Below, one piece after another: positions 46,275-64,000 of a DNA stretch of 64,000 nt. Location: IMG/VR virus record IMGVR_UViG_3300002143_000235, positions 249,709-313,708 of that record; one strand, written 5' to 3'. Position 1 is the first letter of the stretch; each line of letters begins with the position of its first letter. Below the pieces are notes generated by a model. The model had not been told where the DNA came from. It did no database searches and saw only the letters and a program-made list of their open reading frames with translations. Made by a program: the position numbers and the translations under genes.

Positions 46275-46345
46275 ACAGGGTTAGTTTAAAGTTAAAACGC
46301 GGATCGTTGGGATCCGAGATGTTGGTTCAATTCCAATACGCTGTA
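46275..46345 (+). tRNA. Atypical tRNA (Pro/Gln-like anticodon arm)
   Basis: ACAGGGT/ACGCTGT-A, CGGATC-GTTGG-GATCCG, TTGG-TTCAATT-CCAA. Confidence 0.55.
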
Positions 46346-48258: not shown

Positions 48259-48267
48259 AAAAGGACC

Positions 48268-49753: not shown

Positions 49754-50371
49754 TACTATTTATCTCCGTCGACGAAGATTTTACATCCGTCTGTTTTTTT
49801 CTAATTGTACACGAAATTCCTCTATTTGTTTGGAATATTCTGTTTGTGTTTTTTCCCAAATTAAAGGAAAAAATGATTCTAAACGCTTTGTTACATTTGC
49901 AGCAATAAGTTGGTTCACTTGGTTATATACAAATGCATAGATTTCAACTGGTATTGTTGATGAGAAAGATGGATCATGAATATTATCATTCATATATTGA
50001 CAGAACAAATTATTTACAGCATTCATTCTTCTGTGTCTTTATGTTTTGTTGGATTACGTTTTGAATTTTCTTCAGTATTTTCCTCTTCTGTTTGACAAAA
50101 CAATTTAAACACTTTACCAGTATTTGGGCAAGTGAACTGTATAAAATTATTATCTGGTGAATTAATTAATTCAAAACTGATTGCATCATTGTTGTTGATG
50201 TCCTTGTAAAGAAGAACATCCTCATCATTATCAAAACGCACATAAACATTATATGTGCCTGATTTTGCACGTTCTTCTTCCTTTTTTTGTTCAGGACTTT
50301 TATAATTTCCTATTAGATCATCGAAAAGACTCATACCAAAACATTTTCAAATTTATAGAGTCTAAAACTCA

Positions 50372-52012
50372 TTAATCTATATATTGAACAGCATCTAATA
50401 CCCATTTTGGAAAATAATGACTATTCCAACGAAGAAGATCTGCAAAACAACCATCAAGAACATATGTTGATGCATGATCATCCATACTTCTAATTGATCG
50501 TCCATATGATTGAACTACATCCCTTACTGTAGCTAAAGGATAATATTCTTTCATTGTATCCATACGCTTTTTGATCTTTTTAGATCCAAGGTTTGGATAC
50601 GGTATTTTTAATATTGTTTGATGTCTGGATAAATCATCGGATAAATCTACACCAACCATCATAGATGGTGATACAAGTACTGTTGGTTCATCAATTGTCT
50701 GATGTTGTTGAAGTATTTCTGATCTGTTTGATGAATCGTGTGCAAGCATTCTGTTTGAATCAAATGCTTCGCTTACCCAACGTTGAAGTTCGTAATTTGC
50801 AGTATGAATAATGCCTTTCTCTTTTGCATGTCGCTTCATGATTTTCTTAAGAACCTCAAGCTGCTTGGGCCAGACAATTTCTTTTGTTTTAAATGTTTGT
50901 TTACCAACATTTTTAAAAAAATAAATTGGTCTATTTGCTACAGGAAAAGGTGAATCAATACAAATATAATCAGCCATACTAGCATCAATACCATTCATTT
51001 TTGAAAATGCAATCTTGTCTAAAATTGTACCAGACATAAAAATAATATAATCGTATCGACTCCAAACATATTCATCAAGATATGGATATGCCCAAACTGG
51101 TTGTGCTGTCATCTCTACATATTCATCACTAACACCACCACCTTTACTAAATTTTTTAATACGTTCAGCTTCTAAGATCCAATTGTCTTTTGTTTTTTCA
51201 AATTGTTCAGAAAGTGAATCCCATTTCATCATATTGTTTCCAAGTGATTGAATTGTATTTAACGCTTCCATACTACCTTCTTCGGCTTCACGTGATAAAC
51301 GATTCATTACTGATTTAGCAATATTCAAAAAAGGCTCTTTAACAATTTCAATGAATTCTTCAATTAAAAGATCTTCAGGATAGTCACCAAATAATGCCAT
51401 TGCTCGGTGTGTGTCATCATCAGTAAAGCCATTTCTTTTGAGTAATGGTTTACTTATTTTTGTTGTAATAAAGTCTGCGAATACATTTTCAAAGTCGTGC
51501 GCCTCATCAATAATAAGAACACGTGATTGTCTTTTCCAAGCCATAGGCATGAAGACTTTGTATGTTAAAAATAAATGAAAATTAGTTAATGCAACATCAC
51601 CATTTTCAAACTTATACTTTGCTTCTTTATACGGACAATTTTCACATTGAACACCCTGTATTTTACACCAATCCATTCCAGATCCACAGTCTGTATTGAA
51701 AGTTTCACAAGAATAAGATCCTTTTCCCCATAATGAATTCATGAAGTCAAAATCGTTTGTATATTGTTCTTGAAGAATTTTAGAATTTGTTAAAATATCA
51801 AAGTTTGCTGAAATATCATACTCTTTCTTAAACCAATCCATAAACATTACAGAATAGTACGACTTACCAATACCAACAGGTGCATCAATAAGAATAAATT
51901 TTTTATTATTCATAATTGCTTGTTTGGTAAAATTAAGCAATTCTGTTTGCTGTGGTCTTGGGTTTTTACTGAGCTTGATGCGCTCTATATTGTAGATGGA
52001 AACGTCTTTCAT
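50372..52012 (-). CDS. DinG/XPD-family helicase
   Basis: PRPQQ, APVGIGKS, Cys cluster, IIDEAH, SGT, GVD, KIPYP, QSYGRSIRSMDD; start MKDVS at 52012 preferred. Confidence 0.88.
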   Translation of the reverse strand: MKDVSIYNIERIKLSKNPRPQQTELLNFTKQAIMNNKKFILIDAPVGIGKSYYSVMFMDWFKKEYDISANFDILTNSKILQEQYTNDFDFMNSLWGKGSYSCETFNTDCGSGMDWCKIQGVQCENCPYKEAKYKFENGDVALTNFHLFLTYKVFMPMAWKRQSRVLIIDEAHDFENVFADFITTKISKPLLKRNGFTDDDTHRAMALFGDYPEDLLIEEFIEIVKEPFLNIAKSVMNRLSREAEEGSMEALNTIQSLGNNMMKWDSLSEQFEKTKDNWILEAERIKKFSKGGGVSDEYVEMTAQPVWAYPYLDEYVWSRYDYIIFMSGTILDKIAFSKMNGIDASMADYICIDSPFPVANRPIYFFKNVGKQTFKTKEIVWPKQLEVLKKIMKRHAKEKGIIHTANYELQRWVSEAFDSNRMLAHDSSNRSEILQQHQTIDEPTVLVSPSMMVGVDLSDDLSRHQTILKIPYPNLGSKKIKKRMDTMKEYYPLATVRDVVQSYGRSIRSMDDHASTYVLDGCFADLLRWNSHYFPKWVLDAVQYID

Positions 52013-53107
52013 ACAATCTTTTATCTGAAAAAGATTAAAGTGTTTAAAAAATAGAGAAAAGAAAAGAATTAAAAAATGTGCCACATATGTATTATATGCA
52101 TACACATGAGAAATATTAAATTATTTACGACCTACTATACTTGTTTTTTTAACTTTAAAAGGTGGTTGACCATAATATGGACTTGATTCCTCCATTTCAA
52201 CTGTTACACTATCTTTTCCAGAATTCGTAACTATTACTGATACAACGTCTTCTGTAATTGGATGATGAACAAATACTATATCACCTGCAGAAAGTTTCAT
52301 TCCTTCATATAAAGCTAAGAGTCTATCTTTACCATAAATGTGTATCATATGCTTCTATATATCAAAAAAACAATGTATCATTGCAACATTCAAAAGATTA
52401 TATGAAAGGCGTTATACTAGGAGTTAATCTCCATGATTACAAGACAGAATTAAAAACTGGTGAATTAGTTTGTATAGACAACGAGTTTTACAAATTAGAA
52501 AAAATTGATCCTACATTTGGAGATGTTAAATATTTTGTAAATTCAAAAATTAACAACGAACCAATGAATTTTGAAAGAAGTGAAATATCGAAAGCTACAA
52601 TACAGATTTTTGATTCATTGATTTATTATGGTGAAGGCAAACAAGTACGTATTGGATATTTATCGCCATCAGATATTCGAAATATGCGTGCTAAAACAGT
52701 TATTGAAATGGATCTTCCATCTTCAGAAATTGATAATATACACGATGTAGATCTTATTGGACATGAATTTGATGGTAATGTATTAATCAAACAAGAACAA
52801 GATTACGAATTTATTACACATCCTGTTGCTTATTTTAAAGTTTTAACATGATAATAGTAACAATTAGTGCGTGTATATTAATAATCGTTGGAATTATTAT
52901 AATGATGTCATATCTTCACCGTAAGGAAATTAAATTCTTTGAGGATGCAGAACGTATGGAAATTCTTTTAAAGACGAATAACATCACCTATGACGCTGCT
53001 ATTGAAGATTTGAACAAACTTAGGAAAAATGTTAAGAACCGCGACGAACGTCACAGGTACTATCAGATTGTGAAACTCATTGAACTCAAATTCAATACTG
53101 ACATTGT

Positions 53108-53962
53108 ATGAAAATTAGAACTGATATTAATGCTAACTATAAAGCGGTATTCTTCAACTATAAAACAGTTAGGATGCGTATCGATAATTCCAAACCAATT
53201 ACTGCTCCAAAACATCCAGAAATTGAAGATGTTGCAATCAATTCAAAATGTCTTGCTGCTTGTTCATACTGTTACACATCAGCTCTCAAAACAGGTGTAA
53301 ATTTTTCAGATATTGTAGGAAAGGCAACAGCTGTCTGGGGATCATTGAAACCAGAAGACAGACCGTTCCAGATTGCAATTGGTGGTGCAGGTGAATCAAC
53401 AATGCATCCAGATTGGGTTGATTTTGTAAAACATGTAAGTGAGTTGGGTATTGTACCGAATTATACAACAAATGGTATGCACCTCACACCTGAAGTTCTT
53501 GAAGCTACAGAAAAGTATTGTGGTGGTGTTGCATTAAGTTATCATCCACATATCAAAAAAGTATTCACTGAAGCAATGGATAAATTGAAGCAGATTGATA
53601 CTAAATTGAATACACATGTAATTATTGGTGATAAACAATCTTTGCTTGACTTACAAAACATTTTTGATACGTATAAAGACGATATGGATTACTTTGTAGT
53701 TCTTCCATATCAAGCTGCAGGTCGAGCTAAAGAAATTGATACAACAGAAACTTGGAAAGAATTGTTTCTCTGGATTGAAACTTTATCTGACGAACGCAAG
53801 AATCAATTTGCATTTGGTGCGCTTTTTTACGAATACCTGTTAATAAACAAACCAGGATTTGAAATTAATATCTATGAGCCTGAAATCTATTCTGGTTACA
53901 GACTTATGGATAATACATTTAACACATTAAGAAAATCGAGTTATGACCTCACAGAAAAATAA
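53108..53962 (+). CDS. Radical SAM protein
   Basis: CLAACSYC (CxxxCxxC), IGGAGE, NYTTNG. Confidence 0.88.
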   Translation: MKIRTDINANYKAVFFNYKTVRMRIDNSKPITAPKHPEIEDVAINSKCLAACSYCYTSALKTGVNFSDIVGKATAVWGSLKPEDRPFQIAIGGAGESTMHPDWVDFVKHVSELGIVPNYTTNGMHLTPEVLEATEKYCGGVALSYHPHIKKVFTEAMDKLKQIDTKLNTHVIIGDKQSLLDLQNIFDTYKDDMDYFVVLPYQAAGRAKEIDTTETWKELFLWIETLSDERKNQFAFGALFYEYLLINKPGFEINIYEPEIYSGYRLMDNTFNTLRKSSYDLTEK

Positions 53963-54350
53963 AGTACTTGCTTTCATTCGAATTGATTCGATAATTGACA
54001 TCATTACAAATTCTAGTTCAGAACTTTTTGTTATTGAGAACAAAATGGCAATTCCTATTTTAGTTGAAATGACAAACTCAGTGCTTTCAGGTACCGGTTT
54101 CTCTATCACTGAATCATGTGTGGAAAAACGCCTTGTTCAAGATCAACAAGATCACGAAACAGAATGGAAAATTAATGAAGCTCTTGTTTTGTTTCCTGAA
54201 CATGTTCGTGAAGAACTAAAAGCAAAGTATTTGACAGAACCAAACTGGTATGGTATTTCATTTGATCGTGATGATATTTATCGAAACAATGATGATATAA
54301 GAGGAAAATTAATAAGTATCGGTTATGAACTTATTGATACTGACTATTAA
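53943..54350 (+). CDS. 'IDIITNSSSELF' motif protein
   Basis: N-terminal motif shared with 55190-55717; overlaps the radical SAM gene end. Confidence 0.6.
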   Translation: MTSQKNKVLAFIRIDSIIDIITNSSSELFVIENKMAIPILVEMTNSVLSGTGFSITESCVEKRLVQDQQDHETEWKINEALVLFPEHVREELKAKYLTEPNWYGISFDRDDIYRNNDDIRGKLISIGYELIDTDY

Positions 54351-55189
54351 ATAACAAACAAATATGGGATTTTCATATCACAAAACAAAGGACGACTATT
54401 TTATCACAATTAATGATAAACCTTTCACTGATTATCATCCAAACGATGTAGCTTCATTGATTAATAGTCTTCCTGAAGATCAAAAAGTCATTGTAAAGGA
54501 AATGATTCGTCAAAAACCAGAGCATATGTATGAAGATATGACTGGTGTTGAACTACCTGATGATTATGCTGTTGCTTATGGACGACCGTCTATATCTGAA
54601 GTACCATTCATGGGTTCTGAAAATGATGGTTATCCATATCTTCCGGGTCATAATCCTATGTGTAATGGAAAACCATATCATAATGGTATGTGTAAATGTA
54701 AGTACACAGAGTGGAATATGCCTGATGGTAAAGTAGACCGATTTCATACACAAATGTGGCCAGGTGGGCCATGTATCGATGATTTTGATATGTAAATTAT
54801 GAATGTTCAATACAATAATACTAGAGAACTTGAACGATTTCTTCAACCGTTTGCTAAACTAGTATTGCTTAAGCGTGTTGGTAATCAAAAAAATAATTCA
54901 TATTTTTTAAATACTTTCAATCTAATCATTGAATTGAATAAAATAACATTTAAAGAGCATTTATACAGAAAAGATGCTTGGGGTCGTGGATATTTTGGGA
55001 CATGGTTAAAGGAACAATGTAAAACTGTAGGTTATCATTGTCATATAATTGATTTTAAACCATGTGAGGGTAATAAAAATCCCATCACTGGTGATAACTT
55101 AATATTTAGTAAATTGATGAGTGATTACGAAACACCTAGTTCAGAATATTATAACAATGTAGAATTTCAAATTTCAAAAATAGAAAACA

Positions 55190-55717
55190 ATGAGTAAAAC
55201 ACTTTATATTTTTAATGTCGATAATGCGATTGACATCATTACAAATTCAAGCTCTGAACTTTTCATTTTAAATGGTCAAAGCACAGAAATGGTCAATCAA
55301 ATGATTGAATCAGTGTATCCAGACTATAGATCTGAATACGAAGAAGTTGTTGCATTAAAAAATGCTTCACCAGATCAAATCAATACATACATTTCATGGA
55401 TTGAAGATCCATGGCATAGTAATTATAATCGTGATCGTAATTTAACAGAAAAAGAAAAACGAGCTAAAGAAATTAAAACTGCTGAGGATAAAGCTTTAAA
55501 ATTTGGAATGAAACCAGGTCTTTTCTATTCCAATTGGAATGAACGTAACAAAGATGGTTGGTGGTTTATTAATATTTCTGATCGAGGTCTTCGTAAAGCG
55601 GCTGAAATGTTAGATCCAAATGGAACTATCTTTATGTTATTTTCATTTGATGAGAATCCTAACTGGGACTATCAAGAAAAGTTGATGGATATTGGACAAC
55701 GCCATCACTTAGGATAA
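55190..55717 (+). CDS. 'IDIITNSSSELF' motif protein
   Basis: Identical 12-aa motif near the N-terminus. Confidence 0.6.
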   Translation: MSKTLYIFNVDNAIDIITNSSSELFILNGQSTEMVNQMIESVYPDYRSEYEEVVALKNASPDQINTYISWIEDPWHSNYNRDRNLTEKEKRAKEIKTAEDKALKFGMKPGLFYSNWNERNKDGWWFINISDRGLRKAAEMLDPNGTIFMLFSFDENPNWDYQEKLMDIGQRHHLG

Positions 55718-55861
55718 TGGCATATTTACCATGTGACTGGTGTGGAAAAATAACTGACACACAAGGAAGTTGGGATACACTAATAACAATTATATGTGGG
55801 CCATGCTATGATAAACGTGAAGCAAAAAAACAAAATAATACTACAGATAAAAAATCTACAA

Positions 55862-56113
55862 ATGAACACATATCCAGTAATCAACGGAATATATCAACAT
55901 TACAAAGGAGGAATCTATAAGGTACTGTTTCTCTCAAAACATACAGAGACTGAAGAGGTTATGGTAAATTACAAATCATTGCTCTTTGGTAGTTTTCATT
56001 CTCGTCCAATAGATAAATGGTTGGAAGAATTGGAAAAAGACAAACAGTCGGAGGTTCAAAAATCTCGTTTTTTGCTTATTAATGATCCAAAAGAATACGA
56101 GCCATGCGTATAA
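55862..56113 (+). CDS. DUF1653-like protein
   Basis: GIYQHYKGGIYKV, HTETEEVMVNY, RPIDKW. Confidence 0.75.
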   Translation: MNTYPVINGIYQHYKGGIYKVLFLSKHTETEEVMVNYKSLLFGSFHSRPIDKWLEELEKDKQSEVQKSRFLLINDPKEYEPCV

Positions 56114-56700
56114 ACCGTGTGAGTCCGTTGAATCCAATGCCGTCAGATATTCCAGGTAAAGGACATCCAGGAGGCTTTGGTACACCAAGAAAGTTTGATA
56201 TCCATACAGGAATTGATCTTTATTGTGAAAACAATGCCGACGTGTTTGCTATTGAACATGGAACAGTTGTTGCCATTGTAGGATTTACTGGACCATCAGC
56301 TGACTCTGCTTGGTGGAATGATACTGATGCAATCATTGTCAAGTCAAAGAAGGATGGAAAGTATATTGTTTATGGTGAAGTAATTGCATCATGTAATGTA
56401 GGTGAAGAAGTAAAAGCGGGTAATTTAATTGGACGTGTTGTAACAGTCTTAAAGAAAGACAAGGGACTTCCAATGAATATGCTTCACCTGGAGTATTATG
56501 ATACAGATTTCGATCTTGATCCGGTTGTGTGGAAACTTGATGAGTCACAACCGGAAACACTACTTCATCCGGGTCCGTTATTAGGGTTGTATCCACTTAT
56601 TGCAGAGACACCAAGACCATATCAGGAAATTGTGTTTGGAAGCACACCAGTTGGTATAGAACCACCATTTTCATCACATTATTATAAAAGAAAAATATGA
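56104..56700 (+). CDS. M23 family peptidase
   Basis: HTGID (HxxxD) and HLE motifs. Confidence 0.75.
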   Translation: MRINRVSPLNPMPSDIPGKGHPGGFGTPRKFDIHTGIDLYCENNADVFAIEHGTVVAIVGFTGPSADSAWWNDTDAIIVKSKKDGKYIVYGEVIASCNVGEEVKAGNLIGRVVTVLKKDKGLPMNMLHLEYYDTDFDLDPVVWKLDESQPETLLHPGPLLGLYPLIAETPRPYQEIVFGSTPVGIEPPFSSHYYKRKI

Positions 56701-57498
56701 AAACAATTTACGAAAGAACAGCAGAGAATTGGTACATTGAACAATTACCAGAAGGAACCCGTGTTATATTCAAATTTAATCCTGACTGTCAAGGTCAAGG
56801 TGTTATTCGTGGAATAGTTAATGATAGTGTTCCACTTTTGGGTAAAAAATATATTGTTGAAGTTGAAACTATGCATAATAGTATAAATGAAAAGTTAAAA
56901 CATAATTATACATGTTATGCCTTTTCTGAAGTTTTTTTACAAGTTATTTAATAAATTCAGTATGTCAGTAGCAACAACAATTAAAACAACAATCACTAAC
57001 ATTGACGATCTTCCGCTTGAAGTCAAAAATGAACTGGTAGTTATTGCACAATTAACAGAAGATGAAGCAGATCAAATTTTTTCAGACTACGATGAAGTTA
57101 TAGAATTAATTCGTGAATGTGGTGATAGGAACGAGACAAAAGATTCTTGTTATATCTACAAAGAATGGACAATCGATACACCATCATTTTCGATAACAGT
57201 ATTCGGTAGTAATTACCTGAAAGATCGATGCATCTGTGATTTAGAAATGAATGATGAAATTCAGATTATAAATCTTCAGTTACAAAAAGAAAGACAACAA
57301 TCAGATGCTGAACGACGCATTGCTAATAACCGATTATTGTGGGCACCAATTATAGAGGGTAAAACAACTGAAGAAATTTTAGATATCTTGCAGAATTTTA
57401 CACCAAAAAAGAAATAAATTTAAACTTTTTTGAGTTTAATTTCTATAATCAATCCGGTGCATGTATAATTGCATCAATCCAAAAAATAAATTTACAAG

Positions 57499-59175
57499 AT
57501 GTTTAGCAACAAAAAAACACAATTGTTCCCGACGCCTGCGAAAGCCGCGTCCTCGAACAGAGCATCTGCGACAACAAACGCATTTGTTGGGACTGCTATG
57601 AAGAAAGCAGCTGAGACACGTTCTGAGAACGGTGCTCTCAAATACAAAACTACAGGCGATGATTTCGTTGATCAATTCGGGAAACTGGGTGAAATGAAAC
57701 AACCGCGTTCATTTGCAACCATTGCAAAAGATCAGGCATTACTATGGTCACAAAACAAACTACTTACTGTAGCATTCACATTATACATCCGTATGATTAC
57801 TCGTGTAACTAATGTATTTGGAACTGAAACTTCTGTTTCACAGAAAGGTGCAGAACTTCGTCATGAGGGTATTATGCGAATGATTTGGTTGCATACAACA
57901 GCTCCAAAAACATTTTGGAATAACGTACCACTAATGGTATCAGTTGGTTCGTGGCAAGACATCTTTACGATGCTTCAATACGATCTTGTCTATAATGGAT
58001 GGGAAGGACGTAAACTTGACTGGACAAAGTTCGGTAAATTGATTCTTACTGGTCTTACAGATGAGACTCAAATGAACCTTGTTAAGAAATACCTTCCACA
58101 AATCAAAGCAAAATCAGCATGTAAGACTGTTGAAGCGCAAGCTGACAACATGATCGGAAAATGGTTGTGTTCTTTGATCTTCGGTACAAAAATTGGTCCA
58201 GAAGGTGCTACTTACAAAGCTTACCGTAAATTGAAAACTTCCGGAACAGCGCACGAGTGGCAGAAATTGATCTCGCAAGGTAAACACAAACTGGTTGATT
58301 TTAACACGATACACGGACGTGCTTTGAGTAAACTGGTACGTTCTAAATACTTAGCGAACCAGAATCTTACTGAGAAGTATGAAAGCTGGATCACAAAAGA
58401 TTCAACAACTGATGTGAAATACACTGGATTTGTTCACGAACTTTTCGCAGGTCTTCCATCAACAGAAGTTTCATTGGGTGTTGCAAAATCGGAAACGATC
58501 AACAAACAATTTGCAACACTTGTTAAGAAAGGTGGTAAAGGTGCAACAAACCTTATCGTTGTTCGTGATACATCTGGATCTATGGGTTCTACAGCAACAG
58601 GAACAAACATGAGCTGTTATAACATTGCGAAAGCTTTGGCATTATACTTCTCTGAGTTCTTGACTGGAACATTCCAAGATGCATGGATTGAGTTTAATAA
58701 TAATGCACAAATGCATACTTGGAAAGGTACAACACCAATTAATCGTTGGTACAACGACCGTTCAAGCTATGTTGGAGGCACAAATTTCCAATCTGTTGTT
58801 GACTTGTTCATTAACATGAAACGCCAAGGTGTTGCTGAATCAGATTTTCCATCAGGAATTCTGTGTATCTCTGATGGTGAGTTCAATGCATCAGATTTAG
58901 GTAAAACAAATGTTGAATCAGCTCGACGTAAGTTGACTGCTGCTGGATTCAGTGCTGAGTATGTTCGTAACTTTGTGATTGTTCTTTGGAACCTTCAATC
59001 TGGATACGGATCACGTGGCAATAAATTTGAAACCAACGGAGACGTTGAGAATGTATTTTATTTCTCTGGTTACTCAGCTGCAACTGTGTCGTTCTTAACG
59101 AATGATATCAAAACTGCTCGTGAGCTTTTCGAAGCTGCGATGAACCAGGAAGTTCTCTCAATGGTTCAAATCTAA
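57499..59175 (+). CDS. DUF2828-type TROVE/Ro60-like helical domain plus vWA protein
   Basis: 558 aa; SENGALKYKTTG start, GSWQD, KKYLP; C-terminal MIDAS DTSGSM, GGTNF, ISDGEF, WNL, SGYS. Confidence 0.7.
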   Translation: MFSNKKTQLFPTPAKAASSNRASATTNAFVGTAMKKAAETRSENGALKYKTTGDDFVDQFGKLGEMKQPRSFATIAKDQALLWSQNKLLTVAFTLYIRMITRVTNVFGTETSVSQKGAELRHEGIMRMIWLHTTAPKTFWNNVPLMVSVGSWQDIFTMLQYDLVYNGWEGRKLDWTKFGKLILTGLTDETQMNLVKKYLPQIKAKSACKTVEAQADNMIGKWLCSLIFGTKIGPEGATYKAYRKLKTSGTAHEWQKLISQGKHKLVDFNTIHGRALSKLVRSKYLANQNLTEKYESWITKDSTTDVKYTGFVHELFAGLPSTEVSLGVAKSETINKQFATLVKKGGKGATNLIVVRDTSGSMGSTATGTNMSCYNIAKALALYFSEFLTGTFQDAWIEFNNNAQMHTWKGTTPINRWYNDRSSYVGGTNFQSVVDLFINMKRQGVAESDFPSGILCISDGEFNASDLGKTNVESARRKLTAAGFSAEYVRNFVIVLWNLQSGYGSRGNKFETNGDVENVFYFSGYSAATVSFLTNDIKTARELFEAAMNQEVLSMVQI

Positions 59176-59720
59176 GAATAAATAAAACACTCAACTGTGA
59201 AAATGGTTGAGTGTTTTCAAAAATAATATCATGTACGGATTAACTATTGATTTTAAAAAAGAAGGTAATTTTTTTACAGTATCAAAAGATGTAAAAATTA
59301 CTCACGAGCAATTAGAAAAAATTTGCGATTTATTAAATTTTGATAAAATAAAATTTCAAGAAATTCCAGATTTTGAAGATATAGGTAATTTAACAATTGA
59401 AGCAGAATTTTACAATGAATGCACAATTGATGATCTATTTGATGATGATCATCAATTAGTTATGAATGGTTATGGACCTAATTTAGCATCATTTCTGTCT
59501 AATTTAGATTTTGGAATAGATTGGGATGAAGACACCAGTGAAGCTGTAACATCATTTAAAGCTACTATTGAAAATAAATATGTTATTACCTTTGATATTG
59601 AAGAAGGTGATTGTATTGAAGATAGAATCTATGAAACAGATGTAGTTAATCTTAAAATAATTAAAGTTTTACAGTAAACTAAAAGTACTCAATAGTCGAG
59701 CATAATTTAACAAAATAAAT

Positions 59721-60434
59721 ATGGCAATTAATTTAGAAAAGATTGAAGAACGTAAACAATCCGTTATAAATCTTAAAAAAAACAAAGGTATTGAAACACA
59801 GAAGGCACAAGTTGTTTTATGTTTGGATTATTCAGGATCTATGGATGGTCTTTATCGATCTGGTGTCGTACAAGAAACACTTGAACGTGTTTTACCGCTC
59901 GGTTTAGCATTTGATGATAATGGTGAAGTTGATTTTTATTTGTTTGAATCTGGTATTCGTAAGATGCCATCGAATATCACACTTGGAAATATTGATGGTT
60001 ACATCAATGAAAAAGTGATGAATAAATATAGTATGGGTGGAACAAATTATGCTCCAGCAATCAATGCTATTGTTAATGAATTTGCTGAAACTACTAAAAG
60101 TGGATTCTTTGGCAGTTCTAAACCAAAACAATTAGATCTTCCAGTATATGTAATTTTTATTACAGACGGTGAAAATTATGATGAAAGAGATGCAGAACGT
60201 GCAATGATTGAAGCATCTAAACATGGTATTTTCTTTCAATTTATTGGAATTGGTAATTCATCATTTCCATTTCTTGAAAAATTAGATGACATGCCTGGAC
60301 GTGTTATTGATAATGCAGACTTTTTCACTGTTCGTGATTTGAAAAACACATCAGACGATGATCTTTACAAAAAAATGATGACAGAATTTCCTGAATGGAT
60401 TAGAATGTCACGTCAAGCTGGACAAATTAAATAA
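59721..60434 (+). CDS. vWA-domain protein (Ter-associated vWA type)
   Basis: LDYSGSM, FDDNG, GGTNYAP, FITDG, FFQFIGIG, LDDMPGRVIDNADF. Confidence 0.8.
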   Translation: MAINLEKIEERKQSVINLKKNKGIETQKAQVVLCLDYSGSMDGLYRSGVVQETLERVLPLGLAFDDNGEVDFYLFESGIRKMPSNITLGNIDGYINEKVMNKYSMGGTNYAPAINAIVNEFAETTKSGFFGSSKPKQLDLPVYVIFITDGENYDERDAERAMIEASKHGIFFQFIGIGNSSFPFLEKLDDMPGRVIDNADFFTVRDLKNTSDDDLYKKMMTEFPEWIRMSRQAGQIK

Positions 60435-60756
60435 CATATGATTAATCAATTAGCTATCGAGTGTTACATGTTAACACAATCACATGAACCAATTATTCAG
60501 ATGCTAGAAGCAGCAGGAATTGAAACTGAAGATGGAGCAAGAATTGCATTGACTGGTGCAGTTAAATCTAATGTGGTTAGTGCTTTATCTTACGGATCTT
60601 CTTCAGCAGGAATTTCAACATCAAGAACAGCTGGACGTGTTTTAGAGCACTTCAGAAAAAAAGAAGAAAAAAAAGCATAAAAAAATTCAAACAAATTTCT
60701 GTTATGCGAATATAAAACGTATAATTGCATAACAGAACAAATGCGTTCATTGACAT

Positions 60757-61598
60757 ATTGGTACAAAAAAATAAAAAATAACATACAGCAATGTTTAATA
60801 ACGGTTATGTCCGAAAGGACCTGTGTGTGAGCTGTCATCTGAAAAGACACGTATTGTAAATGGGATTGAGTAGATAACTCATTAAACGCTTGGAACCGTC
60901 CTGAATTACTTTACGTTATAAGAACTTAGTAAGTAGCATATCATGCAGTGATTGAATTAGCAAGCAGACAGATTGACTTATCATTAGTCTGAAATTCTTG
61001 CATGTTATTTGAACAAAAGATTTCTTACAGCAAATATTCGTTTAAGCATCCTTATAGCTCGTGGTCGTAGGTTCGATTCCTGCTCTCGCAACAAATTAAA
61101 AAATAAATTGCGAGATAGCTCAGTGGTAGAGCACGTAATAACAAAAACAGAAATCTGATAAGATTAGTTACAGCAAACAAAACAAACATCAAACTTTTAC
61201 TTTGAACACGTTTAAAAACTCTAATCTGATAAGAAGTGTAACAGCAAAATCCTTTATGGTAAAAAATTTGACTCAAACTCAAAAATAGATGGTTCAAATC
61301 CGTCAGCTCGCCGGAGCATAAACGTCAACACTTCTGTACAAAGTCACTTACAGCAATTTTATAACACTGATTTTCTAACTCAATATGTTTAAAAATGTGA
61401 CTTGAAAAAAGAGCACTTACAGCAAACTTAAAACTTTACTTTTTTTGGATAAAAGACGGGCAGGTTCGATTCCTGCGGTGCGCGAACACTCTCGGTGCGG
61501 ATAAACTACACTGTGCTCTGATAAGGATACTTTCAGCAAATTTAAAAAAATTTCATTTGAAGAAAAAACAACACGTATCCTGAATTATTTGTACCAAT
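60757..61598 (+). ncRNA. Array of seven stem-closed RNA units with invariant CAGCAA and tRNA-derived interiors (candidate Y-RNA-like array)
   Basis: Units 60776-61010, 61018-61156, 61161-61227, 61232-61335, 61341-61403, 61410-61519 and 61524-61581, each with a different 7-9 bp terminal stem; outer helix 60757-60767/61588-61598. Confidence 0.8.
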
Positions 61599-61655
61599 TA
61601 TGCTTACTGCATAGTCAAAGAAAAACGACTAAATCCTGAGACGGAAATAGTTAAT

Positions 61656-61686
61656 AAAAAAGGCCAGTCAAATTGACTGGCCTTTT
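61656..61686. terminator. Bidirectional intrinsic terminator ending the RNA array
   Basis: AAAAAGGCCAGTCAA-a-TTGACTGGCCTTTTT. Confidence 0.88.
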
Positions 61687-61836
61687 TCTATTTCTTTAAT
61701 TTTGCAATACTAAAATTAGAATCAAGTCTGACTCGATTAGTACTTGGCTTCCATTTTATGGTTGGCGTAAATTCTATTCTTTTAGGTAATTCTGGTTTAC
61801 CTGAAGAATCTTTATAAGAAATAAAAACTTGTGCCA

Positions 61837-62421
61837 TTATTTAATATACTCTTCTTTAATAAGAGTATAAGTAAATGAATTCCCCCACTTGTCTCTAGCT
61901 TTTCTACAGATCGTCATGAATTCATTAAAATCCTTGATTCGTTTGAAAACAGAACAACCAGCTGACCAATTTTCAACTATTGATGAATCAACCCCACCTT
62001 TGTGAATATTAATTCCAAAGAGACCTTTCTCTATAGAATTCTCATCATAGATATTGTCTTTGTTACCATCACGGTATACAGCAACTTCTTTTTGTTGACA
62101 CAATGCTTCATATTTACCTTGGTGTAAACCAATACGGTGTGAACCTCTGTATTGTCCTGGTACCAATCTTGCACACCCTTTTGAGCTTAACAATTTCTTA
62201 AACATGTAAAATGATCCTGGATCGGTTGTGTTATTCCAGATATAAAATTGCCATACACCATCAACTTTGAATGATACAGTAATGTAATCATCAAATAGAT
62301 TTGTAACTTTATTTCCTTTTGTTCTAACTGCTACGATGTTAATATCGTAATCCCCACCTTCAAACCATTTATAACCTTTAGCTTTAACAGCTGTTTCAAT
62401 TTGTTCTCTTGTATACTTCAT
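61837..62421 (-). CDS. Putative endolysin / YkuD (L,D-transpeptidase)-like cell-wall enzyme
   Basis: GINIHKG...WSAGC (H-x14-C type motif). Confidence 0.55.
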   Translation of the reverse strand: MKYTREQIETAVKAKGYKWFEGGDYDINIVAVRTKGNKVTNLFDDYITVSFKVDGVWQFYIWNNTTDPGSFYMFKKLLSSKGCARLVPGQYRGSHRIGLHQGKYEALCQQKEVAVYRDGNKDNIYDENSIEKGLFGINIHKGGVDSSIVENWSAGCSVFKRIKDFNEFMTICRKARDKWGNSFTYTLIKEEYIK

Positions 62422-62449
62422 ATTTTTATTTTTAATTTAAGATTTTATT

Positions 62450-63124
62450 TTAATAGTCAGATTCTTCATCGAAATATTCATCATCTGTGTTGTCATATTC
62501 ATATTTAAACCATTCAACAAAGGCTTCAGTAGCTGAAAAATCTGGAGCGATTTTAGTAGTAACATCGAAATCATTTTTTATATTTAATTTATTATCAATA
62601 TAAATACCATATCCGTCGCCACTATAATCACAATCACCATTTGTGAATATTAAATCACCTTCGTCAAAAGTTCCACGTGACCATCCACCAAAATGCATCT
62701 TATCATAATTTATTCCAACTGATATTGATATGTTAAAGGAATTTTCAGAATCTTGATTTAAGTATTCACGAATAGTTGTAGATTCATTATTTTCATCGAT
62801 TTCAACACCTAAAATACGCTCGGTTTCTGTACCATTCATATAATACAATTCACCAAATGTAATGTCCATAAAATCATCTGCTGTTAATTTATTAAAATGC
62901 TCTACGCTATTAAATAAACCTTCAGCTTGGACAGAAGCTCGACCATCATCATAACCTAATGCACTAAATGTTTCAAATGGTATAACAGAGCTACTTATCA
63001 TACGCAACCCATTAGCATTAAGAATATATTCGGCATCAACTTGAACAGCATCAAGTGTTTTAAAAGTAATTCCGGCTCCACCGCCTTCATTCATTTTTTT
63101 CCATTCATTTATAGTAGTTATCAT
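62450..63124 (-). CDS. Putative internal head protein with CTS-like N-terminus
   Basis: MITTINEWKKMNE followed by GGGAG; acidic. Confidence 0.5.
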   Translation of the reverse strand: MITTINEWKKMNEGGGAGITFKTLDAVQVDAEYILNANGLRMISSSVIPFETFSALGYDDGRASVQAEGLFNSVEHFNKLTADDFMDITFGELYYMNGTETERILGVEIDENNESTTIREYLNQDSENSFNISISVGINYDKMHFGGWSRGTFDEGDLIFTNGDCDYSGDGYGIYIDNKLNIKNDFDVTTKIAPDFSATEAFVEWFKYEYDNTDDEYFDEESDY

Positions 63125-63172
63125 TGTACTGTTACTTTTATTTTTATATATTTATATTTGTATATTTGTAGA

Positions 63173-63919
63173 ATGAGAGCACCAAAAGCGTTTTTAGAAA
63201 AATGTGGCAAGGAATGGTTTGACGATTACGTCTACCTTGCACGTCAACCACTTGAAGATCGTGGATTTAATATTGTACCCTTTGATGGGACGTTCCTGGA
63301 TGACTTTATTGAACGAACTGTATTTGGACCTGACGATGTGCTTGTGGGCTCCGTAGAAGCAACGATTGCATTCTGGAAAGCGTTAGGTTTTAAAGTTCCA
63401 CGTTATATTGGATATCCAGTTGAATTTGAGAATGCTCTTTCACGTGCAATTACGATTTGCACATTTGAAGATATGGATTTAGAATTTCCATGTTTTATCA
63501 AACCTGCAAAAGATGTGAAGTTGTTTACAGGGTTTGTGATAGAAGACAAAAAATCATACAAACAGTTACACCTCACTTGTCCTGAATTAAAACCCGAAAC
63601 AGTAGTTTATATTTCAGAAGTCATTGATTTTAAAAGTGAATACAGATGTTTTGTTCATAAAGGTAAATTAGTTGGTATCAAGCATTATGCAGGTAACTAT
63701 CGTTTGTTTCCAGATATGGATTGGTTAGAAGAAGTTCTTGCTATAACATGGAAGCAAATGCCTGTTTCCTATACATTAGATATTGGTATAGATGATGGTC
63801 TGATGTACTTGGTTGAAATTAATGATTTCTGGGCTATTGGTGGATATGGATTAGATGGTAAGACTTATGTCAGAATGCTTGTCGATCGTTTTCAGGAAAT
63901 TAAATACAATAACATATAG
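63173..63919 (+). CDS. ATP-grasp domain protein (DUF4343/R2K-like)
   Basis: FIKP..DVKLFTG, SEYRCFV, YTLDIG, LVEIND; ATG at 63173 after a TATATTTG promoter. Confidence 0.75.
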   Translation: MRAPKAFLEKCGKEWFDDYVYLARQPLEDRGFNIVPFDGTFLDDFIERTVFGPDDVLVGSVEATIAFWKALGFKVPRYIGYPVEFENALSRAITICTFEDMDLEFPCFIKPAKDVKLFTGFVIEDKKSYKQLHLTCPELKPETVVYISEVIDFKSEYRCFVHKGKLVGIKHYAGNYRLFPDMDWLEEVLAITWKQMPVSYTLDIGIDDGLMYLVEINDFWAIGGYGLDGKTYVRMLVDRFQEIKYNNI

Positions 63920-64000
63920 TTTTTATCATTATTTTTCTGTATATTTGTAAAAAATTATTTAAACAATATGAAAAAATTAATTCTATTTATTTTTGGCGTT

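What the first reader, a model, noticed from the sequence alone, without database searches (positions are those of the whole stretch)
61161..61581. Array units display different anticodon stem-loop mimics: a possible decoy panel against anticodon nucleases
Seen: unit 3 has TCAAA-CTTTTAC-TTTGA (61189-61205; Lys UUU). Unit 4 has TTTGA-CTCAAAC-TCAAA (61267-61283; Leu CAA), then 4 nt, then T-arm GATGG-TTCAAAT-CCGTC. Unit 6 has CTTTT-TTTGGAT-AAAAG (61439-61455; Pro UGG), then 4 nt, then T-arm GCAGG-TTCGATT-CCTGC. Unit 7 has TTTC-ATTTGAA-GAAA (61551-61565; Gln UUG). Unit 5 is weaker, TGAt-TTTCTAA-cTCA (Arg UCU). All are 7-nt loops with U at position 2 and A at position 6, as in tRNA U33/R37, yet none has a free acceptor end. 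Established: PrrC-type and other defence nucleases cleave specific tRNA anticodon loops such as tRNA-Lys(UUU). Inference: these are non-chargeable decoys or sensors for tRNA-targeting defence, or substrates for repair/modification enzymes.
Basis: partly seen in the sequence, partly recalled or inferred. Interest (0 to 1): 0.85.

Follow-up and report, generated by a model that had tools for sequence, protein, structure and literature searches.

The report
Phage Y-RNA-like array of tRNA mimics
The hairpins are real and belong to six tandem small-RNA units that share one conserved scaffold, display different pieces of tRNA, sit next to a distant relative of the Ro60 RNA-binding protein, and represent an unannotated RNA family found in many phages that closely resembles the "Class I" RNAs of Dictyostelium.

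Summary
They exceed chance modestly within the window (P about 0.0005 to 0.02) and strongly across the family.

Window 61019-61580 (+) holds six tiled units. Each has a unit-specific 6-bp closing stem, the motif UUACAGCAAA after its 5' strand, a variable payload, and a UGAUAA-like linker (6-8 nt here) to the next unit. The payloads are tRNA parts:
- a permuted T-arm/closed-acceptor/D-arm domain like that of YrlA
- anticodon-arm-like hairpins
- anticodon arm plus T-arm

I found 163 distinct units in 36 of 80 related viral loci, always on the strand of a conserved ~560-aa gene (window 57499-59175). This protein carries Pfam DUF2828 and DUF7788. By fold search and profile comparison it is a divergent Ro60 (TROVE plus vWA).

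Units also occur beside this gene in Escherichia phage HY02 (a Felixounavirus), Listeria and Enterococcus phages, and a cyanophage.

Best reading: these are Y-RNA-like partner RNAs of a Ro60-like protein that display tRNA mimics. The "decoy against anticodon nucleases" idea is plausible and untested.

The scaffold matches dictyostelid Class I RNAs feature for feature, but scores just under Rfam's threshold.

The parts
57499..59175 (+). Gene for a 558-aa Ro60-like protein: a helical N-terminal domain plus a vWA domain with a DxSxS MIDAS motif. Pfam DUF2828/DUF7788; PHROG 850 'RNA-binding protein'. Proposed protein partner of the RNAs.
   Evidence: Pfam. PHROG E 3.5e-36. AF2 model. Foldseek top 3 are phage phiRo60 9kop, D. 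radiodurans Rsr 2nvo and Xenopus Ro60 2i91. hhalign against a TROVE alignment gives 82% probability, E 1e-5, 240 colinear columns.
59721..60434 (+). vWA-TerF-like protein gene between the Ro60-like gene and the array. It is conserved at the same place in the close relative L151. Context only; no role shown.
   Evidence: Pfam vWA-TerF-like E 7.7e-61. Same gene order in L151.
60750..60779 (+). Sigma-70-like promoter match (TTGACA, 18 nt, AAAAAT) upstream of the RNA region.
   Evidence: 10 of 12 positions. This is a consensus match only. Other arrays (L061, L066, L160, L159) also have TTGACA-type promoters just before units.
60786..61018 (+). Leader, or a long 'unit 0'. It starts with AUACAGCAAU, and a possible outer stem AAUAAC/GUUAUU spans 60777-61009. 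It contains a conserved hairpin at 60867-60881. Unassigned.
   Evidence: The hairpin keeps pairing through changes on both sides in L151 (GAGU..ACUC becomes GUGU..GCAC).
61019..61155 (+). P1 is GAUUUC/GAAAUC, followed by the motif UUACAGCAAAU. The payload is a permuted tRNA-like domain: T-arm 61067-61083, a 7-bp acceptor-like stem 61084-61090/61109-61115 closed by an 18-nt loop, and D-arm 61118-61132.
   Evidence: Rfam YrlA partial match 61060-61135, 35.6 bits (gathering 69), E 8e-6, model positions 24-84. The minimum-energy fold shows all three arms plus P1. Coordinates.
61162..61226 (+). P1 is GAUUAG/CUAAUC. The payload is an anticodon-arm-like hairpin at 61189-61205 with loop CUUUUAC (UUU, Lys), set on a short second helix AAAC/GUUU.
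   Evidence: The payload is 100% identical in L151 while P1 changes on both strands. The family alignment A2 shows covariation.
61233..61334 (+). P1 is GAAGUG(U)/(A)CACUUC. The payload runs: D-arm-like 61252-61264, anticodon arm 61267-61283 (CAA, Leu), T-arm 61288-61304, extra hairpin 61306-61317.
   Evidence: Rfam tRNA partial match, 26.8 bits. The minimum-energy fold contains all of these hairpins, z -3.29. L151 has UAA at the triplet.
61342..61402 (+). P1 is AGUCAC/GUGACU. The payload is a weak hairpin at 61368-61382 with loop UUUCUAA (UCU, Arg) and a U-C mismatch next to the loop.
   Evidence: The loop is identical in L151. The hairpin is not in the minimum-energy fold.
61411..61518 (+). 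P1 is GAGCAC/GUGCUC. The payload is an anticodon arm at 61439-61455 (UGG, Pro), a T-arm at 61460-61476, and a conserved G-rich tail at 61477-61506.
   Evidence: The T-stem changes on both strands across L151, L072 and L154 (GCAGG/CCUGC, GACUG/CAGUC, GGCUG/CAGCC, GCCAG/CUGGC) while the loop UUCGAUU stays invariant.
61525..61580 (+). P1 is GGAUAC/GUAUCC, motif UUUCAGCAAAU. The payload is a hairpin at 61551-61565 with loop AUUUGAA (UUG, Gln).
   Evidence: Best Rfam Dicty_Class_I_RNA match in the window, 61525-61582, 37.3 bits (gathering 41.5), E 3.5e-5. L151 has AUUUGGA. The same loop AUUUGAA occurs in a Listeria phage unit.
61156..61161 (+). Linker UGAUAA between units. The other linkers are 61227-61232 UGAUAA, 61335-61341 UGUACAA, 61403-61410 UGAAAAAA, 61519-61524 UGAUAA and 61581-61587 UGAAUUA. 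Proposed processing site; it can also extend P1 by A-U and A.G pairs.
   Evidence: Over 163 units the consensus is UAA|G..C|UGAUAA(G).
61657..61695 (+). Intrinsic-terminator-like hairpin plus T-run closing the RNA region.
   Evidence: 14 pairs, of which 6 are G-C.

Best explanation
The region is a transcription unit of about 0.9 kb, running from a promoter-like site at 60750 to a terminator at 61657. It encodes an array of six small structured RNAs built on one scaffold.

The scaffold is:
- a unit-specific 6-bp helix (P1) joining the unit's two ends
- the single-stranded motif UUACAGCAAA directly 3' of the P1 5' strand
- the flanks UAA|G and C|UGAUAA

This scaffold is the constant 'handle'. 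I infer that it is bound by the Ro60-like protein encoded about 1.8 kb upstream, in the way Ro60 binds the terminal stem of Y RNAs.

The variable payload is the 'effector' end. Each unit displays a different tRNA part: a T/acceptor/D elbow as in bacterial YrlA, an anticodon arm alone, or an anticodon arm plus T-arm.

I infer that the array is cut in the linkers into separate RNAs. The resulting RNA-protein particles would present tRNA look-alikes to tRNA-recognising factors of the infected cell. They could tether such factors to the Ro60-like protein or titrate them. Anticodon nucleases are one candidate class of factor.

Shown here: the anatomy, the covariation, the family-wide recurrence, the linkage to the gene, and the Ro60-like fold.

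Inferred: expression in this phage, processing, binding, and the identity of the cellular target.
For: Anatomy:
- The six units tile exactly, each with a perfect Watson-Crick P1 and linkers of 6-8 nt.

Family:
- There are 163 distinct units in 46 tiled arrays from 36 of 80 loci fetched through the protein. All are on the protein's strand and none on the opposite strand.
- All 13 array loci found by the DNA motif alone lie on contigs that the protein search recovered independently.

Covariation between orthologous units of the window and L151:
- Six P1 pairs changed, all on both strands, with none disrupted, while payloads stay nearly identical.
- In the 22-unit alignment, P1 is 100% paired with 6 of 6 pairs covarying, and the anticodon-like stem is 91% paired with 5 of 5 covarying. 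Slid controls give 23-45% pairing.

Circular permutation:
- Aeh1, Ah1, L040 and L068 carry the same P1, UGAUAA and motif as a local hairpin in the anticodon-arm position of an otherwise complete tRNA-like gene.
- P1 therefore sits where Ro60-binding stems sit in YrlA.

Protein:
- Foldseek's top three hits are Ro60 proteins (E 5e-6 to 7e-5, full-length alignments), followed by generic vWA domains.
- hhalign against a TROVE alignment gives 82% probability, colinear through the MIDAS motif.
- PHROG 850 is named 'RNA-binding protein', and mycobacteriophage homologues are annotated 'Ro-like RNA binding protein'.

Precedent:
- Ro60 genes sit beside Y-RNA genes with tRNA-like domains in bacteria and phages (PMC4201824).
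- Thermus phage phiRo60, the best structural match, binds two adjacent Y-like RNAs and forms a complex with host PNPase (PMC12135203).

Expression in a relative:
- Listeria phage AG20 has three units behind a strong promoter directly upstream of its DUF2828 gene.
- In the related phage CKA15, three unannotated regions within 2 kb upstream of the Rsr-like gene are among the most highly transcribed in the genome. Its authors suggested Y RNAs (PMC12282133).

Breadth:
- Units lie beside the gene in Escherichia phage HY02, Enterococcus phage 21C1 and Leptolyngbya phage Lbo-JY46.
Against: - There are no expression, processing or binding data for this phage.
- The link to the CKA15 transcripts is by position only. 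I did not have CKA15's coordinates or sequence.
- The canonical Ro60-binding helix of Y RNAs is absent. Bxz1's Y RNA region has the GGUCCG-type sequence, and phiLo's has a CGAA bulge.
- The Rfam YrlA model matches only the tRNA-like core and stays below its gathering score: 35.6 and 39.4 bits against 69.
- Sequence-level homology of the protein to TROVE is only moderate (82%, low alignment diversity). The AF2 model is mediocre: pLDDT 72.8, N-terminal 67 residues unmodelled, TM 0.31-0.55.
- 44 of 80 related loci have no tiled array within 4 kb of the gene. In those phages the RNAs may be elsewhere, divergent or absent.
- Three ORFs lie between the gene and the array in this window.
- The AU-rich payload hairpins are weak in energy terms.
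- P1 pairing in the unit set is partly circular, because my scan required it.
Confidence: 0.6

Rival explanations
1. The units are free-standing, non-chargeable anticodon-stem-loop decoys or sensors. They absorb tRNA-cleaving defence nucleases such as PrrC, RloC, PARIS AriB, colicin-like or VapC-like enzymes, and the neighbouring protein is irrelevant to that action.
For: - Canonical anticodon loops recur far above chance, 25 against 1.7.
- The commonest are Lys UUU in 10 arrays and Thr UGU/CGU in 7, then CAU, CUU, UCU and GAU. These are anticodons ending in U36-A37.
- From my own knowledge, not checked here, that group includes the classical nuclease target tRNA-Lys.
- Each array carries several different triplets, and triplets turn over between related arrays: UGG to UGA, CAA to UAA. 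A panel under an arms race would behave this way.
- L154 has an Acb2/Tad1-like anti-defence gene and an RNA-ligase-like gene nearby. Listeria phage AG20 has RtcB and an RNA ligase downstream.
Against: - No nuclease, cleavage or rescue data exist.
- This model does not explain the conserved scaffold or the strict linkage to the Ro60-like gene.
- Many payloads are not anticodon arms: T/acceptor/D elbows, D-loop-like UUGG loops, UGCGGAU.
- Some loops (AUUUGAA, xUUGGAU) are conserved between phages of Listeria and of unrelated hosts. That fits a conserved partner better than host-specific nucleases.
- The stems are AU-rich and unlike real tRNA anticodon stems.
- This model can be combined with the best explanation, as decoys presented on a Ro60-like particle.
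Confidence: 0.2
2. An RNA-degradation particle like the bacterial Ro60/Y RNA/PNPase complex. The RNAs tether the Ro60-like protein to a host exoribonuclease such as PNPase to remodel or degrade host structured RNAs. The tRNA-like parts serve only as the nuclease-binding or gating module, and the loop triplets have no specific meaning.
For: - The best structural match, phiRo60, forms such a complex with its Y-like RNAs and host PNPase (PMC12135203).
- Bacterial YrlA has the same T/acceptor/D domain (PMC4201824).
Against: - It does not explain why arrays carry up to nine different payloads.
- It does not explain why anticodon-type loops keep U33, U36 and A37 invariant while their stems covary.
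Confidence: 0.12
3. Decayed tRNA genes or processing spacers within a phage tRNA operon, with no function of their own.
For: - The arrays lie in or beside tRNA and tmRNA gene clusters.
- The payloads are tRNA-derived.
Against: - The scaffold is conserved in 163 units across phage families whose Ro60-like proteins share only about 25-30% identity.
- Changes in P1, the T-stems and the anticodon-like stems preserve pairing.
- One payload is 100% identical between relatives whose P1 differs.
- Pseudogenes would not preserve these features.
Confidence: 0.03
4. A repeat-RNA array of another known kind: a type III antitoxin such as ToxI, a CRISPR-like array, or self-cleaving ribozyme repeats.
For: - Tandem units of 50-140 nt with a conserved junction.
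- CUGAUAAG superficially recalls the hammerhead CUGAUGA box.
Against: - The units are not near-identical repeats. Tandem Repeats Finder finds nothing here.
- No Rfam ribozyme, CRISPR or antitoxin family matches even at E up to 10.
- There is no ToxN-, Cas- or defence-type neighbour in Pfam or PADLOC.
- The junction is followed directly by P1 and the motif, which does not fit a hammerhead core.
Confidence: 0.03

Closest known systems
Bacterial and phage Y RNAs of the YrlA type with Ro60/Rsr. Examples: Salmonella rsr-yrlBA-rtcBA, M. smegmatis, mycobacteriophage Bxz1 gp220, Thermus phage phiLo phiRo60 with Yrl1/Yrl2. Rfam RF02553.
   Same: - Small RNAs are encoded next to a Ro60-fold protein (TROVE-like ring plus vWA with MIDAS).
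- The RNA ends pair in a terminal stem.
- The other end is a tRNA-like module in the same order, T-arm, closed acceptor-like stem, D-arm (unit 1; HY02 5930-6053; Enterococcus 4342-4461).
- There is more than one RNA per locus.
- RNA-repair genes (RtcB, RNA ligase) are nearby in the Listeria phage.
   Different: - The protein is a separate, very divergent family. It has Pfam DUF2828/DUF7788, with no TROVE or vWA_Ro60 hit.
- The handle is a short 6-bp stem plus single-stranded UUACAGCAAA, not the bulged GGUCCG- or CGAA-type Ro60-binding helix.
- Units come in tiled arrays of up to 9.
- Most payloads are isolated anticodon-arm or D-arm look-alikes rather than the elbow.
- A circularly permuted form exists with an open CCA-type acceptor.
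Dictyostelid Class I RNAs (Rfam RF01414; Kjellin et al. 2021, PMC7919456).
   Same: - A 6-bp terminal stem whose sequence varies with compensatory changes, and whose 5'-most G is conserved.
- The motif next to the 5' stem strand: CCUUACAGCAA against (N)UUACAGCAAA.
- The flanks AAG at the start and CUG(U/A) at the end.
- An AU-rich variable remainder.
- Length: 42-65 nt against 41-73 nt for the short units.
- The Rfam model picks out phage units precisely and on the right strand only.
   Different: - No phage unit reaches the gathering score of 41.5. The best are 39.3 bits in L157 and 37.3 in the window.
- Class I RNAs are single genes with their own DUSE promoter in a eukaryote, not arrays.
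- Their known direct binder is the RRM protein Rnp1A/CIBP.
- No tRNA-like payloads are described for them.
- They were reported as unique to Dictyostelia.
- Homology and convergence cannot be told apart here.
tRNA genes, including permuted or split tRNA-like molecules such as the tRNA-like domain of two-piece tmRNA.
   Same: T-arms with UUCGAWU loops, D-arms with GG, 7-nt anticodon-type loops with U33 and R37, and 7-bp acceptor-like stems.
   Different: - No unit has all four arms with a free acceptor end.
- ARAGORN finds none.
- Rfam's tRNA model stays below threshold in the window's array.
Phage-encoded tRNAs that evade or compensate for anticodon nucleases, and T4 tRNA repair by Pnkp/Rnl1. 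This entry rests on my own knowledge and was not checked here.
   Same: A phage-side answer to tRNA-targeting defence, centred on anticodon loops such as Lys UUU.
   Different: Those are functional, chargeable tRNAs or repair enzymes. These are non-chargeable mimics on a protein-binding scaffold.

Membership tests
Y RNA / YrlA (partner of Ro60) | Encoded next to a gene for a Ro60 (TROVE plus vWA) protein | tested here: met
   The gene at 57499-59175 has a Ro60-like fold and weak profile homology to TROVE. Arrays lie on the same strand within 4 kb in 36 of 80 loci, with none on the opposite strand. The protein belongs to a different Pfam family (DUF2828/DUF7788), not TROVE.
Y RNA / YrlA (partner of Ro60) | 5' and 3' ends pair to form the protein-binding stem | tested here: inconclusive
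   P1 closes every unit and covaries. The real RNA ends are unknown because no transcript data are available.
Y RNA / YrlA (partner of Ro60) | Conserved Ro60-binding helix sequence (bulged helix of the GGUCCG or CGAA type) | tested here: not met
   The handle is a 6-bp stem plus UUACAGCAAA. The outer part of the YrlA model does not align. Bxz1's Y RNA region shows the classical sequence instead.
Y RNA / YrlA (partner of Ro60) | tRNA-like domain (T-arm, acceptor-like stem, D-arm); Rfam RF02553 gathering score 69 | tested here: inconclusive
   Unit 1 has the domain in the right order but scores 35.6 bits. The best relative scores 39.4. The other five units lack this domain.
Y RNA / YrlA (partner of Ro60) | Physical binding to the Ro60 protein | not testable with these tools
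   Needs EMSA, RIP or cryo-EM.
Dictyostelid Class I RNA (RF01414) | Short (6-bp) terminal stem with a conserved 5' G and compensatory variation | tested here: met
   (G in 120 of 163 units, A in 42).
Dictyostelid Class I RNA (RF01414) | 11-nt motif CCUUACAGCAA adjacent to the 5' stem strand | tested here: met
   ACAGCAA is nearly invariant and UUACAGCAA is the commonest form, at the same position. The two leading C's are not conserved.
Dictyostelid Class I RNA (RF01414) | Conserved termini AAG... and ...CUGU | tested here: inconclusive
   The DNA context is UAA|G...C|UGAUAA in 163 units, the same letters as in Class I RNAs. The mature ends are unknown.
Dictyostelid Class I RNA (RF01414) | Rfam gathering score of 41.5 bits | tested here: not met
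   Best scores are 37.3 in the window and 39.3 in L157. None of the 13 loci scanned at the gathering threshold matched.
Dictyostelid Class I RNA (RF01414) | Dictyostelid genomic context (DUSE promoter, single genes) and binding by Rnp1A | tested here: not met
   The context here is a phage array with sigma-70-type promoters. Protein binding is not testable here.
tRNA | Complete cloverleaf with a free acceptor stem | tested here: not met
   ARAGORN finds none in 60700-61700. Rfam's tRNA model gives a partial match of 26.8 bits, below 29.
Type III antitoxin, CRISPR or ribozyme repeat arrays | Near-identical repeats, a cognate nuclease gene, or a match to a ribozyme family | tested here: not met

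The most novel reading that the evidence does not exclude
The scaffold (AAG, a 6-bp stem, UUACAGCAA, and a CUG end) is the recognition handle of an ancient ribonucleoprotein built on DUF2828-type Ro60 relatives. This protein family has both phage and eukaryotic members.

Under this reading, the abundant dictyostelid Class I RNAs, described as unique to Dictyostelia and of unknown mechanism, are the eukaryotic counterparts of these phage RNAs, whether by descent or by transfer from phage or bacterial prey. One of their four pull-down partners, DDB_G0281243, has no known function and would be a candidate for the cognate DUF2828-type protein.

In phages, the same handle is used to mount exchangeable tRNA-part mimics. 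This would give a programmable panel of anticodon-arm decoys or adaptors presented on a Ro60-like particle.
Probability: 0.25. Interest if true: 0.93.

Novelty: new variant of a known kind. Interest (0 to 1): 0.8.

Why it matters
- It gives a candidate RNA partner and a working model to a very common phage protein of unknown function. DUF2828/DUF7788 matches 706 records in the phage collection, including Felix O1, P100-like Listeria phages used in food safety, Enterococcus, Staphylococcus, Vibrio and mycobacterial phages. Eukaryotic relatives exist.
- It defines an unannotated family of small RNAs with a clear, searchable signature. These are likely to be the very highly expressed unexplained early transcripts seen in a Listeria phage.
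- It shows a modular design: one protein handle carrying many interchangeable tRNA-part displays. This makes the long-open question of what bacterial and phage Y-RNA tRNA mimicry is for directly testable in E. coli and Salmonella phages, including the idea of decoys against tRNA-cleaving defences.
- It offers the first lead outside Dictyostelia for the mechanism and origin of Class I RNAs.

Tried and rejected
- Tandem Repeats Finder finds no repeat array in 61000-61600, because the units are too divergent.
- ARAGORN and Rfam at the gathering threshold find nothing in the array.
- megablast of 14 kb against the phage collection finds no near relative. blastn found only Aeh1-type phages through a short tRNA-like stretch. 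That stretch revealed the permuted form.
- The motif scan of viral contigs returned 67 loci, but most were chance hits in coding DNA. Only those with a T before CTGATAAG, a 5-6-nt stem and further units nearby were real.
- The scan of bacterial genomes gave 18 hits and no tiled array.
- Hammerhead or another ribozyme: rejected. The core does not fit and there is no Rfam hit.
- ToxI-like or CRISPR-like array: rejected.
- RtcB for the 408-aa ORF downstream of the arrays in L003 and L005: no Pfam hit.
- Sequence searches of the protein and its profile against PDB found nothing. Pfam at E up to 1 shows no TROVE hit. Only profile-profile and fold comparison reach Ro60.
- The neighbouring genes 46500-56700 show no RNA-repair functions. 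PADLOC finds nothing relevant.
- T4 stable RNAs C and D: rnaD has a hairpin UUCC-CUGAGUAA-GGAA followed by UUGCGUUAAUAA, which loosely recalls the junction. It is too weak to claim and I did not pursue it.
- I could not obtain DDB_G0281243 or any dictyostelid DUF2828 sequence with these tools. Burroughs and Aravind 2016 and Avesson 2011 are not in the library.
- A text search for the motif in papers found nothing relevant.
Full report
**1. Checking the observation**

All loops have 7 nt with U at position 2 and A at position 6.

None of the units is a complete tRNA. ARAGORN calls five tRNAs elsewhere in the window and none here. Rfam's tRNA model gives only a sub-threshold partial match at 61252-61304, 26.8 bits, covering model positions 10-63.

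Chance within 61161-61581:
- Stems of at least 5 bp, 7-nt loop, U at position 2 and a purine at position 6: 4 observed. Dinucleotide shuffles give 0.39 (P = 0.0005). The rest of the window gives about 0.9-1.0 per equal length.
- Two of the four are T-arms.
- The total number of 7-nt-loop hairpins is not unusual.

On its own the window therefore gives moderate significance. Energy-based folding supports the G+C-containing arms, but not the AU-rich hairpins of the three short units or the UGG arm of unit 5.

**2. What the hairpins sit in**

The hairpins are payloads of six tiled units at 61019-61155, 61162-61226, 61233-61334, 61342-61402, 61411-61518 and 61525-61580.

Each unit consists of:
- a 6-bp Watson-Crick stem (P1), different in every unit
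- UUACAGCAAA, or a close variant, directly after the P1 5' strand
- the payload
- the P1 3' strand
- a linker UGAUAA or a variant of it

A sigma-70-like promoter match at 60750-60779 and an intrinsic-terminator-like hairpin at 61657-61687 bracket the region. Between the promoter and unit 1 lies a 230-nt leader that begins with the same motif and that I could not assign.

Rfam has no family for these units. The best sub-threshold matches were unexpected:
- The Dictyostelium Class I RNA model hits five of the six units, at best 37.3 bits against a gathering score of 41.5.
- The core of the YrlA (Y RNA-like) model hits unit 1.

Unit 1 holds a T-arm, a 7-bp acceptor-like stem closed by a loop, and a D-arm. 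This is the permuted tRNA-like domain known from bacterial Y RNAs (PMC4201824).

**3. Relatives**

Positions 50291-64000 of the window are identical to the locus (L063) fetched from a 313,708-bp viral contig. There is no close relative among cultured phages.

A motif scan of viral contigs and a protein-guided fetch of 80 loci gave 163 distinct units in 46 tiled arrays of 2-9 units from 36 loci. All are on one strand and none on the other. The consensus is UAA|G-N4-C|WWACAGCAAAU...|G-N4-C|UGAUAA(G).

Unit lengths are bimodal. Units of 41-73 nt carry a single hairpin payload. Units of 77-259 nt carry tRNA-like domains.

The close relative L151, whose neighbouring protein is 94% identical, has orthologous units:
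- Six P1 base pairs changed, all on both strands.
- The Lys-type payload is 100% identical.
- In unit 5 the T-stem changes on both strands across four arrays while its loop stays invariant.

In Aeromonas phages Aeh1 and Ah1, and in two viral contigs, the same elements occur circularly permuted. P1 is capped by UGAUAA as a local hairpin and followed by the motif. This module sits in the anticodon-arm position of an otherwise complete tRNA-like gene with an open acceptor stem. P1 and the motif therefore form a structural module that replaces an arm of a tRNA-shaped RNA.

**4. Are the loops anticodon-like beyond chance, and are they conserved?**

Family-wide counts:

| Measure | Observed | Mononucleotide shuffles |
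|---|---|---|
| Units with a hairpin of at least 5 bp and a 7-nt loop | 91 of 163 | 33.4 +/- 4.7 |
| Loops of the form Y32-U33-NNN-R37-A38 | 25 | 1.7 |

The 25-against-1.7 count includes any T-loops that fit the pattern. The recurrent types below were tallied with T-loops set aside:
- CUUUUAA, CUUUUAC and AUUUUAA (UUU, Lys): 10 arrays
- CUUGUAA and CUCGUAA (Thr): 7 arrays
- then CAU, CUU, UCU and GAU

An alignment of 22 Lys/Thr-type short units shows U33, U36 and A37 invariant. All five stem pairs change on both sides, with 91% paired. Slid controls give 23-45%. One caveat: these units were selected because they have such a hairpin, and my scan required P1 pairing.

Between the window and L151, four of five triplets are kept and CAA becomes UAA, both Leu. 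At greater distance the orthologue of unit 5 shifts from UGG to UGA.

A second recurrent class of payload loop contains UUGG or AUGG and looks like a D-loop rather than an anticodon loop. A third, UGCGGAU, is shared between a metagenomic array and coliphage HY02.

**5. The neighbouring protein**

Every array locus found by DNA motif alone lies on a contig that the protein search recovered independently. The window's copy of the gene is at 57499-59175.

What the searches show:
- Pfam sees only DUF7788 and a weak DUF2828 match.
- PHROG 850 calls it 'RNA-binding protein'.
- Sequence searches against solved structures find nothing.
- The AlphaFold model (pLDDT 72.8) has an all-helical part at residues 70-345 and an alpha/beta part at 352-523, with an invariant DxSxS MIDAS motif.
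- Foldseek's three best PDB matches are Ro60 proteins: Thermus phage phiRo60 9kop, D. radiodurans Rsr 2nvo and Xenopus Ro60 2i91. E-values run from 5e-6 to 7e-5 with full-length alignments. Generic vWA domains follow.
- A profile comparison with a TROVE alignment seeded from mycobacteriophage Bxz1 gp220 gives 82% probability over 240 colinear columns, including the MIDAS elements.

I conclude that this is a very divergent Ro60-type protein.

Ro60 genes are typically adjacent to the genes of their Y RNAs in bacteria and phages (PMC4201824). phiRo60 binds two adjacent Y-like RNAs and forms a complex with host PNPase (PMC12135203).

**6. Cultured phages and expression**

The protein family occurs in 706 phage records. 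Units lie next to the gene in four cultured phages:

| Phage | Units |
|---|---|
| Escherichia phage HY02 (Felixounavirus) | 4 single units interspersed with tRNAs, one with a permuted tRNA-like domain |
| Leptolyngbya phage Lbo-JY46 | 5-unit array |
| Enterococcus phage 21C1 | at least 2 units |
| Listeria phage AG20 | 3 units behind a strong promoter |

All four proteins pass Pfam's cut-offs for DUF2828 and DUF7788. AG20 also has RtcB and an RNA ligase just downstream.

In the related Listeria phage CKA15, three unannotated regions within 2 kb upstream of the Rsr-like gene are among the most highly transcribed of the genome. The authors speculated that these are Y RNAs. The protein was found in virions (PMC12282133). 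I could not check CKA15's coordinates, so the identification with the three units is an inference.

**7. Mechanism**

- Shown: a conserved handle (P1, motif and flanks), variable tRNA-part payloads, and tight linkage to a Ro60-fold gene.
- Inferred: the protein binds the handle; the array is cut in the linkers; the particles present tRNA look-alikes to tRNA-recognising factors.

The flanks allow P1 to be extended by A-U, A.G and U-A pairs (UAA-G...C-UGA). The linker UGAUAA is self-complementary with two G.A pairs.

Which factors are targeted is open. The deep conservation of some loops across unrelated hosts, together with the elbow-type payloads, fits a conserved partner such as an RNase or a modification enzyme.

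**8. Dictyostelium**

Class I RNAs are described as follows (PMC7919456):
- 42-65 nt long
- a 6-bp terminal stem that varies by compensatory changes, with an invariant 5' G
- an 11-nt motif CCUUACAGCAA next to the 5' stem strand
- conserved termini AAG and CUGU
- a variable remainder
- reported as unique to Dictyostelia

The short phage units share each of these features. In 62.9 kb from seven loci, searched on both strands, 9 of the 10 Rfam RF01414 matches with E up to 1 coincide exactly with units. The best score overall is 39.3 bits, still under the gathering score, so membership is not established.

The protein family has eukaryotic members. The Aeh1 gene was annotated as similar to an Arabidopsis protein, and DUF2828 is mentioned in plant papers. 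One of the four proteins pulled down with a Class I RNA, DDB_G0281243, has no known function. I could not obtain its sequence. Homology and convergence remain undecided.

**9. Verdict**

The structures are tRNA-part mimics, but they sit on a Y-RNA-like scaffold tied to a Ro60-like protein, and the decoy function is untested.
- The system is a new variant of the Ro60/Y-RNA kind, with a distinct handle, array organisation and modular payloads.
- I found no description of the RNA family in Rfam 15 or in the searchable literature.

Noticed in passing
window 45392-45466 and 46182-46267 (+): Rfam's tRNA model scores 34.9 and 34.0 bits here, above its gathering score of 29, but ARAGORN does not call these as tRNAs. 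They lie next to tRNA-Gln 46275-46346 and may be atypical tRNAs or tRNA-like genes.
   Followed up: no
window 60786-61018 (+): A 230-nt leader precedes unit 1. It starts with AUACAGCAAU and has a possible outer stem AAUAAC/GUUAUU (60777-61009), which is conserved in L151. It contains a hairpin at 60867-60881 whose pairs change on both strands in L151, and two further CUGAAWU sites at 60900 and 60988. There is a weak Rfam DUF2693-RNA match at 60745-60850 (23.6 bits, gathering 81.3). A 2026 preprint reports that the related DUF2693-FD RNA is a tRNA mimic.
   Followed up: partly
L151 7312-7451: The closest relative has one more unit than the window. It is a second permuted tRNA-like domain with a different T-arm and D-arm, inserted before the orthologue of unit 1 and re-using the P1 GAUUUC/GAAAUC. 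Arrays therefore gain and lose units.
   Followed up: partly
L085 6922-7281; L024 1-337 (-); L159 891-1238: Phage tmRNA genes lie directly next to the arrays or the Ro60-like gene in several phages. L085 encodes a 28-residue tag. Real tRNA clusters flank the arrays in L075, L156 and L160.
   Followed up: no
L001 2720-2840 (Aeromonas phage Aeh1): A tRNA-like gene has a normal acceptor stem and D-arm, but two T-arm-like hairpins (GGUUCGAUUCC and GGUUCGAAUCC) and a long insert. It lies next to two tRNA-like genes that carry the permuted P1/UGAUAA/motif module. One of those two is annotated as an intron-containing tRNA-Val.
   Followed up: partly
L070 5054-5172 (-) (phage T4 rnaD, species 2 RNA): T4's stable RNA D, whose function is unknown, contains UUCC-CUGAGUAA-GGAA followed by UUGCGUUAAUAA. 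This loosely resembles the permuted junction (stem, CUGAUAAG, stem, UUACAGCAAAUAA). It is too weak to call homology.
   Followed up: partly
L160 8108-12554 (Listeria phage AG20): Just downstream of the Ro60-like gene lie an HD-type phosphohydrolase, RtcB (Pfam 204 bits), a 'tRNA amidotransferase' and an Rnl2-type RNA ligase. This RNA-repair neighbourhood recalls the Salmonella rsr-yrlBA-rtcBA operon.
   Followed up: partly
L162, L165, L170 (Campylobacterota MAG contigs): Three related contigs share a conserved intergenic site: UCUGAUAAG, 5 nt, UUACAGCAAA, then a short complementary stretch, which could be a minimal unit without payload. The other 15 hits in bacterial genomes look like chance matches in coding DNA.
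   Followed up: no
window 59721-60434 (+): A vWA-TerF-like protein gene and two small ORFs lie between the Ro60-like gene and the array. L151 has the same order. A second vWA protein next to a vWA-containing Ro60 relative may be part of the module.
   Followed up: no
linkers, e.g. window 61156-61161: The consensus linker UGAUAA reads as two consecutive stop codons (UGA UAA). It is also self-complementary with two G.A mismatches, so adjacent linkers could pair with each other. Its significance is unknown.
   Followed up: no
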